A DNA stretch of 64,000 nucleotides from the sequence record NC_005083.2; one strand, written 5' to 3'. The translations under genes were made by a program, and so were the position numbers. Of the stretch, positions 43,708 through 57,214 are shown in pieces (position 1 is the first letter of the stretch; each line of letters starts with the position of its first letter). Under the pieces are notes generated by a model. The model saw nothing but the letters and a program-made list of their open reading frames with translations, was not told the origin of the DNA and did not search any database.

Positions 43708-44232
43708 CTATTTGCGCCCTTTACGATTTGCCTTATTTGCTTTTCTTTTTGCTCTACGCAACTCTTTGCGTTTTGCGATTTTGTCTGCACGTCTAACTGC
43801 ATCATAATCCGCAGCACACGACGCAGCAAACGCATCAGGCTTGAAAACGGGTTCTTGGCCCACGTATCCCAAGATAGTGCCCTTAGCTTCGTTATACGCA
43901 ACGTGTGAACGATGGGATGGGTCTGGGTTGATGTCAACGTGAACTTCAAACCCACGAGTACCACACATTGGCTTAACACGCAGAGCAGTTTCACCTGCTT
44001 TATAGACTTCATTCATCAAACGACTACGAATACCATCTTTACACGACATGTACGCTGGTTCAGTTTCGATAGATTTGAATACTTGAGCGCCTTTGCTACC
44101 CTCAAGGTGAATGATGATTACAGTAGCGTAACTAATCATATCACTCTTACGCTTGCTATCACACCCAACATAAATCGTACTGTTCGGATGACTGTTATTG
44201 ATAGCTGTTTCAATTGCTTCCCAATCGAACAT
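43708..44232 (-). CDS. RNase H-like protein (DUF458/YkuK family)
   Basis: IYVGCDS, RLMNEV, EVHVDIN, KPDAFAASCAAD. Confidence 0.8.
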   Translation of the reverse strand: MFDWEAIETAINNSHPNSTIYVGCDSKRKSDMISYATVIIIHLEGSKGAQVFKSIETEPAYMSCKDGIRSRLMNEVYKAGETALRVKPMCGTRGFEVHVDINPDPSHRSHVAYNEAKGTILGYVGQEPVFKPDAFAASCAADYDAVRRADKIAKRKELRRAKRKANKANRKGRK

Positions 44233-44282
44233 TTTCACCTCTGTACAAAAAAGGGCAGCACAATGCCGCCCTTATCACTTAT

Positions 44283-45719
44283 TTAAAAGCTGTAGCGTTC
44301 AACGCCTACAGTTTTCAGCATGATCTTGACTGGCTCAAGCTCACCACCCAACAGTGAAGTCAGGATAGATGGGCTACAACCCGATACCAGTGCAGTACCC
44401 GCTTCGCCAGCTTTAACCGGAACGTTGCCAAGACGACCACGAATGTTCCAGAAGACTAGTTGTGGCATTTCATAGCCAGCACGTGCGTACATAGCTTTGA
44501 TTGCGTCGAAGTTTGCACGTTCGCCACGACCGTACCAGCCACCACCAGTATTTGCTTGGTCGAATTCCATGTCGCTCATGATAAGCAACTTAGTCGGCAT
44601 TTCTTCTTGTGAAAGATTTGCACGTTTCGCACGTTCTAACAGAACGTTGAAGCACTTACCGATGTTTGTGCTCATGTCTTCGCCTGATCGATTCATGTTG
44701 TCAAGACGCTCTTTTAGTGAGCTACCGCGTAACTGGTGGAAGTGCGGATCGCTTGAGAACGAAATGAACTGATCTTTGAAGATGCCTTCATTGCGTTCAG
44801 CAACATAGATGCCAAGAGACATTGCAACTTGCTTACAAGTCACACCTGAACGATCTGCACCTGCGTTGATTGGCGTGCTCATAGAGCCAGACACGTCAAC
44901 AACTGGGATGATGCGCTCATCAGAGCCTTCCATGTAGTTCGGCAGGGCTTTCCATTGCTCGTTCGCTACAGACGCATTACCATGACTAACGCTCTTAACG
45001 ACATCATATGGGAACAAGGCACCAGCGTTGATCTTCGCTTCACCTTTTTGAAGCGACTCGATGTAGCTTGTGTAACGAACAGAAGCGTTACGACCGAATG
45101 CTTTTTGATAACGAGCAGACGCTACAGATGGCAACTTACCGAAGTCGATTGCATCCCATTCTTGCGCACACATCTTCTGTTCAACAGTGTCAGACAAAAG
45201 TGCTAGAATCTTACGCCACTGCTTCGCAGTTACACCAAGAGACTTGATTGTGCGCTTGAACACATGACCGTTTTTGCTGTTCTCGCGTGGGAACCACTTC
45301 GCAGCGAGACCGTTCTTGTCGTTTACAATCGCATTTGACCACAGTGTGATCGCGTCTTTTTCAAGTCTTGTGCCGAAAGCAGAAATCAAGTCGTCGAAGC
45401 GACCTAGTTCTGGAATTTTCGACATTACAGCACGAGCTACGTCAGGCTGCTCATTACAAAGCTTAGTGAATAGAGTACGGAAAGTACCACGTTCACCCGC
45501 ACCACCGCGAACATCACGAGACCACAAAAGAATGCGTGTCGCTAGTTCTGGGTTTTCTGCAAACGCACGACCGAACAGTGTTTTAGACTGATCGTTACCA
45601 CGCATAGCAGCAATACCGAAGAACAAGTTTAGACACTCGTTACCTGAAGTGCTGTGAGTAACTGCACCGTTTGCTGTACGTGAATCGTTTGATTGCATAG
45701 CGTTCATAAATGCTGACAT
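44283..45719 (-). CDS. DUF2828-family TROVE-like plus vWA protein (Ro60-like)
   Basis: RDVRGGAGER, GRFDDL, AAKWFPRE, VDVSGSM, SDMEFD, LVFWN. Confidence 0.85.
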   Translation of the reverse strand: MSAFMNAMQSNDSRTANGAVTHSTSGNECLNLFFGIAAMRGNDQSKTLFGRAFAENPELATRILLWSRDVRGGAGERGTFRTLFTKLCNEQPDVARAVMSKIPELGRFDDLISAFGTRLEKDAITLWSNAIVNDKNGLAAKWFPRENSKNGHVFKRTIKSLGVTAKQWRKILALLSDTVEQKMCAQEWDAIDFGKLPSVASARYQKAFGRNASVRYTSYIESLQKGEAKINAGALFPYDVVKSVSHGNASVANEQWKALPNYMEGSDERIIPVVDVSGSMSTPINAGADRSGVTCKQVAMSLGIYVAERNEGIFKDQFISFSSDPHFHQLRGSSLKERLDNMNRSGEDMSTNIGKCFNVLLERAKRANLSQEEMPTKLLIMSDMEFDQANTGGGWYGRGERANFDAIKAMYARAGYEMPQLVFWNIRGRLGNVPVKAGEAGTALVSGCSPSILTSLLGGELEPVKIMLKTVGVERYSF

Positions 45720-45754
45720 TGTTTATTCCTCATATTAAATTGCTGTAAAATGTC
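45715..45754 (-). promoter_or_regulatory. CAGCAA-motif hairpin sequestering RBS and start codon
   Basis: gacatt-tta-cagcaa...gagga...aATGtc on minus strand. Confidence 0.7.
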
Positions 45755-45810
45755 GTTTTGATGTGATGATTATACACGGATTTGAACCCGTGTAAACACT
45801 TTTTTCAATT

Positions 45811-46125
45811 TTATCGAAAATTCATTCGAGTTAGATTCGTACCGTTTTCGTGAATCTCAACTAGCACGCGACCGCCCGTTTCATAAGACGTTCGGATAGA
45901 ACGATAACCATGCTCTTCGAAGAATGTACGAATAATAGTCGCACCACGCTTGTCTTTATCAGCAGCGTGAATGGGCACTTTTACGATGATAGGGAAACTA
46001 GACCCCGACTCAACTGCGTGCATGAATTCTTTCTCACATTCGCTCGTGTAATGCTCGGTAAGAATTCGTTTTTCTTCTGCTTCACGAGCGTGAATTTGTT
46101 GTTTGAGATCATTATGATTAATCAT
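45811..46125 (-). CDS. hypothetical protein
   Basis: coupled ORF. Confidence 0.55.
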   Translation of the reverse strand: MINHNDLKQQIHAREAEEKRILTEHYTSECEKEFMHAVESGSSFPIIVKVPIHAADKDKRGATIIRTFFEEHGYRSIRTSYETGGRVLVEIHENGTNLTRMNFR

Positions 46126-46457
46126 TGAAACCCCGCTTGTTTGTTTTCTCGAATTGTCAATTTGACAAAAGAATATGAGTAATCTCTCATATCACGCGGA
46201 TCTCCAGAGTAATGTCCGAACTGTGCATCGAAGTTATGAAAACCCTCGCGTCGCATGACGCCTTTGATGAGAGACATCATTTCATCACAACATTCATTGC
46301 GGTCAACATTCACCTGAATCGTGATTGGAAACTGAAACCCAGCAACGCCCCCGATTTTACGTTCGATTGCTTTGCGCATTTCAACTACGAAGAGTTCTTC
46401 ACGAGTTGAGCGATTCTGTTTGACTTTTTGAATTAATGTATCGTATAAATTACCCAT
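46122..46457 (-). CDS. hypothetical protein
   Basis: start moved to ATG 46457 (agga RBS). Confidence 0.55.
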   Translation of the reverse strand: MGNLYDTLIQKVKQNRSTREELFVVEMRKAIERKIGGVAGFQFPITIQVNVDRNECCDEMMSLIKGVMRREGFHNFDAQFGHYSGDPRDMRDYSYSFVKLTIRENKQAGFQ

Positions 46458-46824
46458 CAATATATTCCTTAATCGGCTTAGAAAAGTGACGAATACAAGA
46501 ACTGTCAAGTCGTTTACGACCATCACCATCTATATCAGGTAGTGTGTATTCGTCATTAAACGGCTGACCGCTTTCTTTCGCAATCTCATAGGCATCGGCT
46601 CGATTGAAGTATTCACCACAATAGTTGATAAACCCCTGACCGCGATCCCCGAGTTCGTTTCGATGTTCATATGTACAACCTAGTTCTTTCAATAACTTAA
46701 AGACTGATTGCATGTTTCGACCGAAATGGCAGCTATCAGCAACAACAATGTCGCGCACTTCACCGTTCGGTAGTGTCACTCGAATTGCATTAGCAGCAGA
46801 CGATATTACATTGACGTGCGACAT
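46450..46824 (-). CDS. conserved phage hypothetical protein
   Basis: QGFIN..GEYFNR..A..IAKESGQ motif. Confidence 0.65.
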   Translation of the reverse strand: MSHVNVISSAANAIRVTLPNGEVRDIVVADSCHFGRNMQSVFKLLKELGCTYEHRNELGDRGQGFINYCGEYFNRADAYEIAKESGQPFNDEYTLPDIDGDGRKRLDSSCIRHFSKPIKEYIDG

Positions 46825-47162
46825 GTATCGTACCTCATAAAAATTGAACCAACGCGCTTATACTGACCAGAGTGAGAAAGCAACAGAGCCATTTTACTAT
46901 GACCAACGGGATTGCTTGTCACTAGAACAACAGTGCGCGGAAAATTACGATGATCAATCGCATGAGAGAGAATATCATACCCCTCTCTACCAACATCATC
47001 ACCTAGGTCATTGTCCATGAATAGAGTGATGTCAGTTAGATTTGTGTGCTTGACGAAATTCATACCGTCTTCGAATGTACGAAGAACTAGCTTTTCATCG
47101 TCGCGTACGTAATCTGACGTGAACTTATTAATGTCACGCAGATCATCAATCATAACGTACAT
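46806..47162 (-). CDS. cyclic-phosphate-processing receiver (cREC)-like domain
   Basis: IDDLR..RTFED..MDNDLG..GYDIL. Confidence 0.7.
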   Translation of the reverse strand: MYVMIDDLRDINKFTSDYVRDDEKLVLRTFEDGMNFVKHTNLTDITLFMDNDLGDDVGREGYDILSHAIDHRNFPRTVVLVTSNPVGHSKMALLLSHSGQYKRVGSIFMRYDTCRTSM

Positions 47163-47627: not shown

Positions 47628-47840
47628 TTAATGTGAGTGGCGTAACTTCTTTTCGATCATTCGATCTACAATCGTGGAGTACATAAGATGCTCTTTGTAG
47701 TATTTCTCATCAACTCGGTTGCACTGGAATTGTCGAAAATCTTTGCGTAAGCGGGCAATGAATTTATTAAGTGCTTTGCGCACTTTGCAAACTTCAGACA
47801 GTTCCATGCTTTTTAGTGTATCTTCAGAAAGTATTTCCAT
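47628..47840 (-). CDS. hypothetical protein
   Basis: gagg RBS. Confidence 0.55.
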   Translation of the reverse strand: MEILSEDTLKSMELSEVCKVRKALNKFIARLRKDFRQFQCNRVDEKYYKEHLMYSTIVDRMIEKKLRHSH

Positions 47841-47869
47841 GATTGTTCACCTCTTAGTTAATAGAATAC

Positions 47870-47914
47870 GGGAGACACGGGAATCGAACCCATTGCCTTG
47901 ACCACATATCTCCC
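47870..47914 (-). ncRNA. minimal tRNA-like remnant (acceptor plus T arm, no anticodon arm)
   Basis: gggagat/gtctccc stem; gggTTCGAttccc. Confidence 0.5.
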
Positions 47915-55300: not shown

Positions 55301-55416
55301 TGGTAGTCGGGGCTGGATTCGAACCAGCGACCACGTGCTTAACAGGCAATTGAAGGAGTGCTGGAGCGATACTTGTCAGTATCATTCTTCGTGCTCTACC
55401 ACTGAGCTACCCGACT
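55301..55416 (-). ncRNA. tRNA-mimic RNA (GACA hairpin, CAGCAC)
   Basis: acceptor, D arm, T arm, ACCA; gatact-GACA-agtatc-gctc-CAGCAC. Confidence 0.8.
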
Positions 55417-55421
55417 ATGAA

Positions 55422-55943
55422 TTATTTAACTTTGAACTTCAAATTACGCCAGTCAAAGTTTCGTTTGTTCTTTGTGTTGTAGAACGTGCCCCAATCAATA
55501 GCAATCGGACAGTTCTTACTACCTACACGAGCGATAAAGACATCGTGAGTCTCGCTGTAACGCTCTCTAAGCTCTTTTAAACGCTTATCGTAGTTAGCGA
55601 TATACTCTGCACACGCTTTGTTGTAAGCTGCTTTAGAGAAGCGTTCGTCACTCGAAAATACATTACCCAGATAAGGTCGAATAACACGAACTCGTTCTTT
55701 AGACCAACCCATACTAAAGCTGTTTTCAATCTCACCTGAGATTTCACCAGTCTTCTTACATCTAGCAAGAATGACCCAGCAACGTTCACGCCGAAAATCT
55801 TTTCGTACGTACACGTTAACGTGCTTGTCAATGTACTCTTGATAACGAGCGTTATACTCAGCACGCAGTTTATTGCGCACTTCAGGCGACATTGCAGCCC
55901 GTTCTTCTTTCGAAAACGCTTGTGCGAATTTCAATGGTTTCAT
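55422..55943 (-). CDS. hypothetical basic protein
   Basis: gagga RBS before ATG 55943. Confidence 0.6.
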   Translation of the reverse strand: MKPLKFAQAFSKEERAAMSPEVRNKLRAEYNARYQEYIDKHVNVYVRKDFRRERCWVILARCKKTGEISGEIENSFSMGWSKERVRVIRPYLGNVFSSDERFSKAAYNKACAEYIANYDKRLKELRERYSETHDVFIARVGSKNCPIAIDWGTFYNTKNKRNFDWRNLKFKVK

Positions 55944-55956
55944 TATAATTTCCTCT

Positions 55957-56196
55957 TGGCGCCGCTCGTGTGAATCGAACACACGTCAAACACAACACCT
56001 CGTCCACCCAATTAGAGTTTCGAAGTAAGAGCTAATCAGCATTTCGGAGCAGTCGAGCGTTATTTCTACGAGTGAGCTTTCGACAACTCACACGCACTTT
56101 CTACCCGGTCCCAGTGATTCGGTACCAACGCAGGTTGCGAACCTACGTCTGCACTAATGCTGGGAAAACACTGCGTATTGTACACCAGTTAGCGGC
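55957..56196 (-). ncRNA. 240-nt RNA with tRNA-like termini
   Basis: gccgct/agcggc-GCCA; gtgtgTTCGAttcacac; several internal hairpins. Confidence 0.7.
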
Positions 56197-56198
56197 AT

Positions 56199-56429
56199 TT
56201 AAAGATAGCTATCAAAGACAGCATCATCAACTTCTTCAATATTGATGTCAGCGTAACACTCATTCGCAATTGCTTGAATTTCATCTATTGAAACTGTACC
56301 TGCGTACAATACAACAGCGTCGTTCGGAATCACGACATCACACATGTATTTGTTAAACATTGCAGTTCTGAAATCAGAATCAACAGAGTAACCGTGCATT
56401 GATGTGATAACTAGCAATTTATGTGACAT
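56199..56429 (-). CDS. hypothetical protein
   Basis: gagga RBS; own promoter upstream. Confidence 0.6.
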   Translation of the reverse strand: MSHKLLVITSMHGYSVDSDFRTAMFNKYMCDVVIPNDAVVLYAGTVSIDEIQAIANECYADINIEEVDDAVFDSYL

Positions 56430-56508
56430 AATGTTTTCCTCGTGTAGTTGATAATGTGTATACTACACGTTGATGAAACGCCTGTCAACAACTTTTTCAA
56501 ATTATTTT

Positions 56509-56966: not shown

Positions 56967-57090
56967 TGGTGGAGAGTGATGGATTTGAACCACCGACCAA
57001 AAGATTTACCTAGTTATTAAGGTTTGCAGCATGAATGCTTGTCAGTATTCTTTAACATTCTTTTGCTCTACCAGACTGAGCTAACTCTCC
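56967..57090 (-). ncRNA. tRNA-mimic RNA (GACA hairpin, CTGCAA)
   Basis: ggagagt/actctcc-ACCA; gaatact-GACA-agcattc-atg-CTGCAA. Confidence 0.8.
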
Positions 57091-57096
57091 ATAATT

Positions 57097-57214
57097 TGAG
57101 GGTGAAGTACAGGACTCGAACCTGCGACCTCCGGCGTGCATGTAAATGCAGAATGAAATCTTATCAGACTTCGTTTTTTGAGCCGGCATTCTAACCAACT
57201 GAACTAACTTCACC
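57097..57214 (-). ncRNA. tRNA-mimic RNA on an Asp-like shell (GATA hairpin, CTGCAT)
   Basis: ggtgaag/cttcacc; ccggc/gccgg; gaagtct-GATA-agatttc-att-CTGCAT. Confidence 0.8.

What the first reader, a model, noticed from the sequence alone, without database searches (positions are those of the whole stretch)
55957..56196. 240-nt RNA with tRNA-like ends and encoded CCA
Seen: the 5' gccgct pairs with 3' agcggc-GCCA, there is a canonical T arm, and about 170 nt of internal hairpins (gtagg-ttcgca-acctgc, gtgagt..gctcac) plus a CAGCAT segment. It lacks tmRNA alanine identity and clear group I intron P7 elements. Inference: a large tRNA-anchored ncRNA, possibly another member of the CAGCA family.
Basis: partly seen in the sequence, partly recalled or inferred. 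Interest (0 to 1): 0.65.

Follow-up and report, generated by a model that had tools for sequence, protein, structure and literature searches.

The report
New tRNA-like RNA in phage KVP40
An unannotated, about 240-base RNA gene in the tRNA cluster of Vibrio phage KVP40 folds like the top half of a tRNA carrying a large conserved three-armed insert, belongs to no described RNA family, and always sits just in front of one family of unknown phage proteins.

Summary
On the minus strand (56196 to 55957) of what is Vibrio phage KVP40 lies a 240-nt element with a 6-bp acceptor stem (plus an A.G seventh pair), a canonical T arm (G53-C61, loop UUCGAUU) and, in KVP40, an encoded GCCA. It is unannotated. 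ARAGORN finds nothing there, and Rfam has no hit within it beyond a sub-threshold beta_tmRNA match over its 3' end. Homologues occur in 49 KVP40-like phage records and five metagenome contigs. On 17 sequences, 96.7% of pair cells are standard (78% shuffled, about 40% slid) and 41 of 66 pairs show double changes. The fold has no D stem: a 9-nt linker with invariant GG, then a 12-bp helix replacing the anticodon arm, three internal arms, then the T arm. This resembles the tRNA-like domain of tmRNA. It is not a tmRNA (no G3.U70, no tag frame). It is not a 'CAGCA family' member, because CAGCA is a KVP40-lineage substitution and the hairpin module is absent. It does not qualify as a YrlA Y RNA. CCA is not conserved. 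The RNA always directly precedes the ribosome-binding site of a KVP40.0317-family gene (262 clusters, no annotation). I read it as a tRNA-style-processed RNA coupled to that gene. Function and expression are untested. Earlier scan notes covered neighbouring RNAs, not this one.

The parts
55957..56196 (-). Whole tRNA-like RNA (240 nt; RNA position 1 = window 56196)
   Evidence: Sequence. The covariance model R1 finds a single copy in the window at 258 bits.
56190..56196 (-). Acceptor stem, 5' strand (GCCGCUA). It is preceded by A-U, so U is at position -1 in all homologues.
   Evidence: Pairs covary: GCCGCU/AGCGGC, GCCGCC/GGCGGC, GCCGUC/GACGGC, GGCGGG/CCCGUC and GCCCGCA/UGUGGGC. The 5' flank matches that of true KVP40 tRNAs.
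56181..56189 (-). 9-nt linker ACUGGUGUA with invariant GG. It is a D-loop analogue; there is no D stem.
   Evidence: G11 and G12 are invariant. No covarying local stem was found.
56168..56180 (-). P2, 5' strand. This 12-bp helix with one bulged U takes the place of the anticodon stem.
   Evidence: It pairs with 55987-55998. Swaps AU to UA and AU to GC occur at three pairs, and 100% of cells are paired.
56109..56165 (-). Arm P3: outer stem CCCAG/CUGGG, conserved internal loops (ACAUUA and GAAUCAC) and a terminal hairpin. It contains the non-conserved CAGCA.
   Evidence: 13 of its 20 pairs show double changes.
56054..56107 (-). Arm P4, with a hairpin whose 6-nt loop GUCGAA (56079-56084) is invariant in the KVP40 clade, followed by the conserved GAAAUAA.
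   Evidence: All 15 pairs show double changes in A6. The loop is not kept in the distant members L168, L165 and L157.
56008..56039 (-). Arm P6: an 8-bp stem with a 16-nt almost invariant loop, CUCUUACUUCGAAACU.
   Evidence: The stem is 100% paired, with a UA-to-AU swap. The loop's UCU(U/G)A start and AAAC end are kept even in the distant members.
55987..56007 (-). Conserved joiner GUGGACGAG, then the P2 3' strand GUGUUGUGUUUG.
55968..55984 (-). T arm: 5-bp stem closed by an invariant G-C pair, loop UUCGAUU.
   Evidence: 4 of 5 pairs show double changes. The loop is invariant in the clade apart from one U-to-G in phage 1.081.O.
55957..55967 (-). Acceptor 3' strand GAGCGGC, discriminator G, and CCA.
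   Evidence: The discriminator varies (G, A or C), and CCA is replaced by ACA, UCA or ACG in other lineages.
55422..55956 (-). Shine-Dalgarno AGAGGAAA, which starts directly after the CCA, and the true ATG (55943) of KVP40.0317 (173 aa). This is the gene family that always follows the RNA.
   Evidence: The annotated GTG start at 55982 lies inside the RNA.
56460..56488 (-). Sigma-70-like promoter (TTGACA, 17 nt, TAGTAT) that could drive ORF 0318, the RNA, ORF 0317 and pseudo-tRNA-3.
   Evidence: Consensus scan only. The next strong terminator-like site is at 54775-54755.

Best explanation
This is the gene of a new, clade-restricted tRNA-like non-coding RNA. Shown: it has a covarying acceptor stem, a canonical T arm and an invariant GG linker, which together make a tRNA 'elbow' without a D stem, as in the tRNA-like domain of tmRNA. 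A 12-bp helix replaces the anticodon arm. That helix carries three covarying arms with near-invariant loops. In every sequence that includes the 5' end, the RNA begins after a U at -1, as real tRNAs of the same cluster do. Its 3' end touches, or in L165 lies nine bases from, the ribosome-binding site of the following ORF. That ORF is a KVP40.0317-family gene, or a small ORF placed before one. Inferred: the RNA is transcribed with its neighbours. RNase P cuts it at G+1, and it is trimmed at the 3' end like a tRNA. The CCA is encoded in KVP40; elsewhere it would have to be added or is dispensable. This yields a stable RNA and also frees the downstream message. The insert then most likely serves as a binding platform, with the 0317-family protein as the leading candidate partner. 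It is not a decoding tRNA and probably is not aminoacylated.
For: Structure: 96.7% of pair cells are standard on 17 sequences, against 78.3% shuffled and 34-46% slid. 41 of 66 pairs have double changes, and 0 of 500 shuffles reach the observed values (alignments not fitted to the model give 93.9%). Not a known family: no Rfam match at gathering score; with E up to 10 only a 14.8-bit beta_tmRNA match over the 3' end of the KVP40 copy, and nothing on the RNA strand in four homologue loci searched to E 5; no ARAGORN call. tRNA-like processing context: the 5' flank is A-U then G in all 13 homologues printed, as in many KVP40 tRNAs, and 29 of 30 tRNA genes there encode CCA. In nt-1, CZ01 and L161 the RNA follows a tRNA-Met by 10-15 nt. 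Link to the downstream gene: the RNA lies directly 5' of a 0317-family gene, or a small ORF plus that gene, in six KVP40-clade lineages and in L161, L164, L168 (56.6 bits, E 1.5e-18), L157 (E 5e-6) and L165 (5'-cut). Those proteins are down to 42% identical. The protein family is large and unannotated: 262 clusters, no Pfam hit, no PDB fold match.
Against: No transcript evidence could be obtained. The three RNA runs laid held no phage reads. So expression, the RNA ends, RNase P cleavage and stability are all inferred. CCA and the discriminator base are not conserved, which weakens the idea of a mature tRNA-like 3' end. Contig L167 keeps only a 60-nt acceptor-plus-T-arm minihelix at the same place. 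This suggests the tRNA-like end, a processing signal, may be the essential part, and that the insert is dispensable in some phages. Binding of the 0317 protein rests only on gene order. Its model shows no recognisable RNA-binding fold apart from a weak HMG-box-like N-terminus (Z about 4).
Confidence: 0.45

Rival explanations
1. It is a purely cis-acting leader. The tRNA-like fold is a punctuation and stabilising signal for the downstream 0317-family message. The insert, especially the pyrimidine-rich P6 loop CUCUU, modulates access to the adjacent Shine-Dalgarno sequence. There is no free-standing functional RNA.
For: The 3' end abuts the ribosome-binding site in every KVP40-clade lineage, whatever lies upstream, and lies nine bases from it in L165. 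L167 keeps only the minihelix before the same gene. KVP40 has a second acceptor-plus-T-arm minihelix at 47866-47914, about 25 nt before another ORF's ribosome-binding site. The P6 loop CUCUU can pair with AAGAG of the ribosome-binding site (read from the sequence).
Against: About 180 nt of three covarying arms with near-invariant loops is far more than a processing signal needs. The proposed loop-to-ribosome-binding-site pairing is only 4-5 bp and cannot be tested by covariation, because both sides are conserved. In the nt-1 clade the ribosome-binding site changes to GGAGAA while the loop stays the same.
Confidence: 0.25
2. It is a Y-RNA-like partner of the phage's Ro60-like protein: a non-permuted counterpart of bacterial and phage YrlA, which combine a tRNA-like domain with a GNCGAA Ro60-binding motif.
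For: The KVP40 protein at 44283-45719 (minus strand) carries DUF2828 and DUF7788, and its model matches Ro60/TROVE structures. The top 13 PDB hits are all Ro60, with probability 1.0 and TM 0.49-0.59. YrlA RNAs have a tRNA-like domain plus GNCGAAN0-1G (PMC4201824). A Thermus phage Ro60 binds CGAA-bearing Y-like RNAs (PMC12135203). The GUCGAA loop is invariant in the KVP40 clade. All seven RNA-bearing phages tested encode the Ro60-like protein.
Against: The gene lies 10-15 kb away, not within 4 kb. Phage Aeh1 has the Ro60-like gene but no such RNA. The flanks of the gene, up to 10 kb each side where the contig allows, also lack the RNA in 79 other phage loci. GUCGAA is replaced by GUGAAG, GUUUAA or another loop in the distant members. 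The motif sits in a hairpin loop, not in a terminal stem. Rfam YrlA does not hit. A six-letter motif with one free position is expected about 0.2 times by chance in 240 nt (my arithmetic).
Confidence: 0.1
3. It is a tRNA decoy. The acceptor, T-arm and elbow mimic soaks up or misdirects a host factor that recognises tRNA shape, such as a tRNA-targeting defence nuclease or a modifying toxin. It would act alongside the phage's large tRNA set.
For: The RNA has an intact tRNA elbow and acceptor but no anticodon. It sits inside a 30-gene tRNA cluster.
Against: There is no direct evidence. A decoy would not need a conserved 180-nt insert or a fixed position before one gene family.
Confidence: 0.08
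4. It is a degenerate or specialised tmRNA that enters stalled ribosomes.
For: The end domain has the tmRNA layout: no D stem, a GG linker, and a long helix running straight into the T arm. Another phage with the same Ro60-like gene carries a true tmRNA at the head of its tRNA array (75 bits to RF00023).
Against: There is no G3.U70 in any lineage. The discriminator varies and CCA is not conserved. No frame with a conserved tag or stop exists. ARAGORN does not call it. The Rfam tmRNA models give only 14.8 bits over the T arm, against a gathering score of 84.
Confidence: 0.03

Closest known systems
tRNA-like domain of tmRNA (Rfam RF00023 and relatives)
   Same: Both have an acceptor stem plus T arm, no D stem, a short GG-containing linker in place of the D loop, and a long helix (P2) that leaves where the anticodon stem would be and encloses a large internal domain.
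   Different: This RNA has no alanine identity pair, no tag reading frame, no detectable pseudoknots and no conserved CCA. It is 240 nt rather than roughly 350. The tmRNA models score far below threshold.
Phage T4 stable RNAs species 1 and 2 (rnaC, rnaD)
   Same: Both are unexplained stable-RNA genes of more than 100 nt inside a T4-type phage tRNA cluster. rnaC also ends with a canonical T arm.
   Different: The covariance model finds no sequence or structure homology in T4. rnaC has only a weak terminal stem, and the sizes are 139 and 119 nt. That the T4 RNAs are processed by tRNA enzymes and lack a known function is my own knowledge, not tested here.
YrlA-type bacterial and phage Y RNAs (RF02553; PMC4201824)
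   Same: Both mimic tRNA with a T arm and elbow. Both have a short CGAA-containing conserved motif. A Ro60-like protein is encoded by the same genome.
   Different: YrlA is circularly permuted relative to tRNA, with its ends in the Ro60-binding stem. It is 80-130 nt long and lies within 4 kb of the Ro60 gene. Here the ends form the acceptor stem, the gene is 10 kb away, and the motif is not kept in distant members.
KVP40 'pseudo-tRNAs' with a hairpin-CNGCA module in the anticodon arm (tRNA-Pseudo-3, -4, -5)
   Same: They share the same cluster and strand, and the same idea of a tRNA shell carrying a foreign insert in place of the anticodon loop.
   Different: Those genes keep a full D arm and anticodon stem, score 50-55 bits to the Rfam tRNA model, and carry a 45-54-nt module. 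This RNA has no D arm, a 182-nt unrelated insert, and no such module.

Membership tests
tRNA (RF00005) | 7-bp acceptor stem and a T arm with a G53-C61 closing pair and a UUCRANN loop | tested here: met
   There are six Watson-Crick pairs. The seventh position is A.G, G.A, U.G or A-U, depending on lineage. The T arm is canonical and covaries.
tRNA (RF00005) | D arm, anticodon arm with a 7-nt loop, and recognition by tRNA finders | tested here: not met
   There is no D stem and no anticodon loop. ARAGORN and the Rfam tRNA model do not call it.
tmRNA | tRNA-like domain without a D stem, joined to a long P2 helix | tested here: met
tmRNA | G3.U70 alanine identity pair and a 3' ACCA | tested here: not met
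   Pair 3:70 is C-G in all sequences. The discriminator is G, A or C. The tail is CCA in the KVP40/ValKK3 clade and, among the others, only in L165.
tmRNA | Internal tag reading frame with a conserved stop | tested here: not met
   No frame or peptide is shared between lineages.
tmRNA | Match to the Rfam or ARAGORN tmRNA models | tested here: not met
   The only match is 14.8 bits to beta_tmRNA over the T arm, against a gathering score of 84. ARAGORN finds none.
YrlA / Y RNA | tRNA-like domain | tested here: inconclusive
   The T arm and elbow are present, but the topology is not permuted and there is no D arm (PMC4201824).
YrlA / Y RNA | GNCGAAN0-1G motif in or near the terminal stem formed by the 5' and 3' ends | tested here: not met
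   GUCGAA exists, but in an internal hairpin loop, and it is lost in L168, L165 and L157.
YrlA / Y RNA | Encoded within about 4 kb of the Ro60 gene on the same strand, and a match to RF02553 | tested here: not met
   It is on the same strand but 10.2 kb away. RF02553 does not hit the element.
YrlA / Y RNA | Physical binding to Ro60 | not testable with these tools
   This needs pull-down or gel-shift experiments.
KVP40 'CAGCA' module RNAs | 6-7-bp hairpin with a UGAYA loop, then 3-4 nt, then a conserved CNGCA | tested here: not met
   The module is seen in pseudo-tRNAs 3, 4 and 5 but not here. CAGCA is present only in the KVP40 lineage.
T4 rnaC / rnaD | Homology to the T4 genes | tested here: not met
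   Model R1 hits only tRNAs in T4.
tRNA gene with a group I intron | Complete tRNA exons flanking an intron with a group I core | tested here: not met
   There are no D-arm or anticodon-stem exon halves and no group I Rfam hit.

The most novel reading that the evidence does not exclude
The RNA is the RNA subunit of a previously unrecognised tRNA-mimicking ribonucleoprotein. Its protein partner would be the KVP40.0317 family, a widespread, wholly unannotated family of about 120-170-residue proteins found in phage tRNA arrays. The particle would use its tRNA elbow and acceptor end to dock on the host's tRNA or translation machinery during infection.
Probability: 0.2. Interest if true: 0.8.

Novelty: new variant of a known kind. 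Interest (0 to 1): 0.6.

Why it matters
Phage tRNA clusters are usually treated as codon-supply devices. This cluster also holds a large, strongly constrained RNA that keeps only the parts of a tRNA read by processing enzymes and shape-recognising factors, and replaces the decoding arm with a conserved 180-nt domain. The RNA has gone unannotated since the KVP40 genome was published in 2003, and the annotated start of the neighbouring gene even overlaps it. It defines a new structured-RNA family with good covariation support. It is tied to a protein family of unknown function that is common in phage tRNA arrays. That gives a concrete, testable entry point into what tRNA mimics such as T4 species 1 RNA do for large phages, which is an old open question.

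Tried and rejected
1. Rfam was run at gathering and at permissive thresholds, on the window and on four homologue loci. No family matched.

2. ARAGORN gave no tRNA or tmRNA call.

3. Exact-pattern scans with the conserved core found only VH7D in IMG/VR, and nothing in JGI metagenomes or in 185,579 prokaryote genomes. A looser 15-base pattern gave 50 IMG/VR matches, one of them the VH7D record; the model rejects the other 49 as chance.

4. Public RNA-seq: no RNA run is on record as holding the stretch, and the three RNA runs laid held no reads. This says nothing about expression.

5. T4 rnaC and rnaD, Aeromonas phages Aeh1 and 65: no homologue.

6. A small peptide starting at the apparent AUG: the A and U are positions -2 and -1, and the frame is broken by a one-base insertion in D482 and F86. 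Rejected.

7. Tag peptide: none.

8. Hammerhead-like reading of CUGAUUAG...CGAAAC: rejected. The catalytic G is a U, there is no stem II, and the covarying P6 stem uses those bases.

9. Pseudoknots between unpaired segments: no covarying candidate. The complementary loops (GUCGAA, UUCGAA, T loop) are invariant and so untestable.

10. Function of the 0317 protein: Pfam gave only a sub-threshold Colicin D hit (E 0.076). PHROGs lists it as unknown function. Foldseek, VIA-align and the protein atlas gave no convincing match.

11. The region upstream of the 0317 homologue in L158 is not detectably related. It has only a terminal stem and a P6-like hairpin, judged by eye.

12. The KVP40 genome paper (PMC180978) is not held, so I could not check whether it mentions this RNA.

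Full report
IDENTITY AND PLACE. The window is Vibrio phage KVP40, a T4-related Schizotequatrovirus (window position + 124000 = position in AY283928.2). The finding lies on the minus strand, running from 56196 to 55957. It sits inside the phage's tRNA cluster, where ARAGORN tRNA genes and Rfam gives 31 matches, all on the minus strand. The element fills the gap between ORF KVP40.0318 (stop codon at 56199) and KVP40.0317, and nothing is annotated there. The deposited GTG start of 0317 (55982) lies inside the RNA. The real start is almost certainly the ATG at 55943, which follows the ribosome-binding site AGAGGAAA. Later phage records annotate the ATG.

THE OBSERVATION.
- GCCGCU pairs with AGCGGC.
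- The seventh acceptor position is an A.G apposition.
- The discriminator is G, and CCA is encoded.
- The T arm has a closing G-C pair and the loop UUCGAUU.
- The two named hairpins and a CAGCAU are present.
The single-sequence fold is only modestly better than shuffles (z -2.93). The argument therefore rests on comparison with homologues.

HOMOLOGUES. BLASTN finds the element in 49 phage records, all Vibrio phages of the KVP40/nt-1 group, at 100% down to 69% identity. I fetched representatives of six lineages: KVP40/phi-pp2, ValKK3/VH7D/phi-ST2, D482, F86, nt-1/VS1/QD01/CZ01 and 1.081.O. The covariance model later added five metagenome contigs:
- L161 (203 bits)
- L164 (201 bits)
- L168 (56.6 bits, E 1.5e-18)
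- L157 (20.6 bits, E 5e-6)
- L165, cut off at its 5' end (14.6 bits)
The RNA is absent from T4, Aeromonas phages Aeh1 and 65, 185,579 prokaryote genomes and JGI metagenomes, as far as the pattern scans and the model can see.

STRUCTURE. RNAalifold, an exhaustive scan for compatible helices, and hand curation converge on one fold. In order from the 5' end it consists of:
- an acceptor stem;
- a 9-nt single-stranded linker with invariant GG;
- a 12-bp helix P2 with one bulged U;
- three arms, P3, P4 and P6;
- a conserved joiner;
- the 3' strand of P2;
- two nucleotides;
- the T arm;
- the 3' acceptor strand.
On the MAFFT alignment of 11 sequences, 93.9% of pair cells are standard. The shuffled-partner control gives 78.1%, and slid partners give 37-47%. 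38 of 66 pairs show changes on both sides. On 17 sequences aligned to the model, the figures are 96.7%, 78.3%, 34-46% and 41 of 66 pairs. That alignment leans towards the structure by construction. Every helix has compensatory changes. Acceptor examples are GCCGCU/AGCGGC, GCCGCC/GGCGGC, GCCGUC/GACGGC, GGCGGG/CCCGUC and GCCCGCA/UGUGGGC. This is a real structured RNA.

WHAT KIND OF tRNA MIMIC. The acceptor stem, the T arm and the invariant GG linker together preserve the coaxial 12-bp minihelix and the elbow of a tRNA. There is no D stem and no anticodon loop. The helix leaving the elbow encloses 182 nt. This is the layout of the tRNA-like domain of tmRNA. Membership of tmRNA fails on every other defining feature:
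- Pair 3:70 is C-G everywhere.
- The discriminator is G, A or C.
- No reading frame or stop codon is shared.
- ARAGORN does not call it, and the best Rfam tmRNA score is 14.8 bits against a gathering score of 84.
One of the 79 other phage loci that encode the same Ro60-like protein carries a true tmRNA at the head of its tRNA array. Phage tRNA arrays can therefore host such genes, but this is not one.

THE 'CAGCA FAMILY'. Earlier scan notes (s1-156179, s1-156407, s1-156050) describe a module shared by neighbouring KVP40 RNAs: a short hairpin with a UGAYA loop, then 3-4 nt, then CNGCA. I confirmed that module in pseudo-tRNAs 3, 4 and 5. The 240-nt RNA has no such hairpin. Its CAGCA exists only in KVP40 and near-identical isolates; phi-pp2, VH7D, D482, F86, nt-1 and 1.081.O read CAACA, GAACA or CGACA. 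It is not a member of that family.

CCA AND PROCESSING. 29 of 30 tRNA-type genes in KVP40 encode CCA. The 240-nt RNA has CCA in the KVP40 and ValKK3 clades and in L165, but ACA, UCA or ACG elsewhere. The encoded CCA is therefore not a family feature. Together with the variable discriminator, this argues against a conserved aminoacylation role.

The 5' flank is A-U before G+1 in all 13 sequences printed. This is the same leader end as many genuine tRNAs of the cluster and has the U at -1 that RNase P favours (the RNase P preference is established knowledge). In nt-1, CZ01 and L161 the RNA follows tRNA-Met by 10-15 nt. In F86 a good TTGACA/TAAGCT promoter-like pair lies about 20 nt upstream (read). 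In KVP40 a consensus-like promoter lies upstream of ORF 0318, and the next strong terminator-like site is 1.2 kb downstream. Co-transcription followed by tRNA-style excision is thus plausible, but it is inferred. The three RNA runs laid held no phage reads.

LINK TO THE DOWNSTREAM GENE. The context upstream of the RNA varies: an ORF, a tRNA, a promoter or another small RNA. The downstream context does not. The 3' end abuts the ribosome-binding site of a KVP40.0317 homologue, or of a 28-69-codon ORF followed by one; in L165 nine bases lie between. This holds for six KVP40-clade lineages and for L161, L164, L168, L157 and L165, whose proteins are down to 42% identical to 0317. In L167 the same place holds only a 60-nt acceptor-plus-T-arm minihelix.

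The C-terminal two-thirds of the 0317 protein belong to a large family: 262 clusters at E up to 0.001. The family has no Pfam domain and no match in PDB. Gene order is therefore the strongest functional clue. It is compatible either with an RNA-protein pair or with a cis-acting leader.

THE Ro60 LEAD. KVP40 encodes a DUF2828/DUF7788 protein at 44283-45719 on the same strand, 10.2 kb away. Its predicted structure matches Ro60/TROVE proteins: the top 13 PDB hits are all Ro60, probability 1.0, TM 0.49-0.59. Bacterial and phage Y RNAs of the YrlA type combine a tRNA-like domain with a GNCGAA motif (PMC4201824). A Thermus phage Ro60 binds CGAA-bearing Y-like RNAs (PMC12135203). The GUCGAA loop of arm P4 is invariant in the KVP40 clade.

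The lead weakens on testing:
- Aeh1 has the Ro60-like gene without the RNA.
- The flanks of the Ro60-like gene (up to 10 kb each side, less where the contig ends) in 79 other phage loci lack the RNA.
- The loop is not kept in L168, L165 or L157.
- The topology is not that of YrlA.
- RF02553 does not hit.
I keep this explanation as a rival at about 0.1.

VERDICT. This is a real, unannotated, well-supported new family of tRNA-like RNA with a tmRNA-type end domain and a conserved three-arm insert. It is genetically coupled to an unknown phage protein family. Its kind, a tRNA mimic in a phage tRNA cluster, is known (T4 species 1 RNA, YrlA, the tmRNA end domain). Its architecture and its gene linkage are new. 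Expression, processing and function remain to be shown.

Noticed in passing
window 47866-47914 (minus strand): A 49-nt match to the model consisting only of an acceptor stem (GGGAGA/UCUCCC), a GG-containing linker and a canonical T arm, with no CCA. It lies about 25 nt before the ribosome-binding site of a 70-codon ORF (47628-47840). Phage 1.081.O gives a like-sized 47-nt match elsewhere in its genome (17.5 bits; its sequence was not read).
   Followed up: partly
window 55304-55416, 56970-57090, 57101-57213 (minus strand): Three tRNA-shaped genes (annotated tRNA-Pseudo-3, -4, -5) with full D and T arms and 45-54-nt inserts in the anticodon arm. Each insert carries a hairpin with a UGAYA loop followed by CNGCA. 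Like-sized tRNA-shaped genes (110-123 nt) are annotated at the matching places in the related phages.
   Followed up: partly
window 55943-55982 (minus strand): The deposited start of KVP40.0317 (GTG at 55982) lies inside the RNA. The ATG at 55943, behind AGAGGAAA, is the start used in later phage records.
   Followed up: yes
window 43708-47162 (minus strand): A cluster of RNA-metabolism-like genes next to the tRNA array: an RNase H-like protein (PF04308), a protein that folds like Ro60/TROVE (DUF2828 + DUF7788), and a cyclic-phosphate-processing receiver domain protein (PF20274).
   Followed up: partly
L005 about 1370-1490 (Vibrio phage D482): Between tRNA-Met and the 240-nt RNA homologue, where KVP40 has ORF 0318, D482 has about 120 nt closed by an 8-bp terminal stem (GUCCUACG/CGUAGGGC) followed by ACCA. 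This may be another small RNA with a tRNA-like end.
   Followed up: no
L050 8605-9054: A phage contig that encodes a homologue of the Ro60-like protein carries a bona fide tmRNA (RF00023, 75.4 bits) at the head of its tRNA array. It also has two sub-threshold matches to Dictyostelium Class I RNA.
   Followed up: no
L167 950-1009: In one metagenomic phage contig, the place before the small ORF and the 0317-family gene holds only a 60-nt acceptor-plus-T-arm minihelix. Its 3' end has the same sequence as that of the full-length distant member L157.
   Followed up: partly
L158 1229-1425: Upstream of another 0317-family gene lies a 197-nt non-coding stretch. It has a terminal stem (GUGGGG/CCCCAC), a GC-rich hairpin where the T arm would be, and a hairpin whose loop (UUCUUCAGUAAACC) resembles the P6 loop. 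The model does not detect it.
   Followed up: partly
window 55422-55943 (minus strand), protein residues 27-80: A sub-threshold Pfam match of the 0317 protein to Colicin D, a tRNA-cleaving toxin domain (E 0.076, 13.8 bits against a cut-off of 25). The fold searches do not support it.
   Followed up: partly
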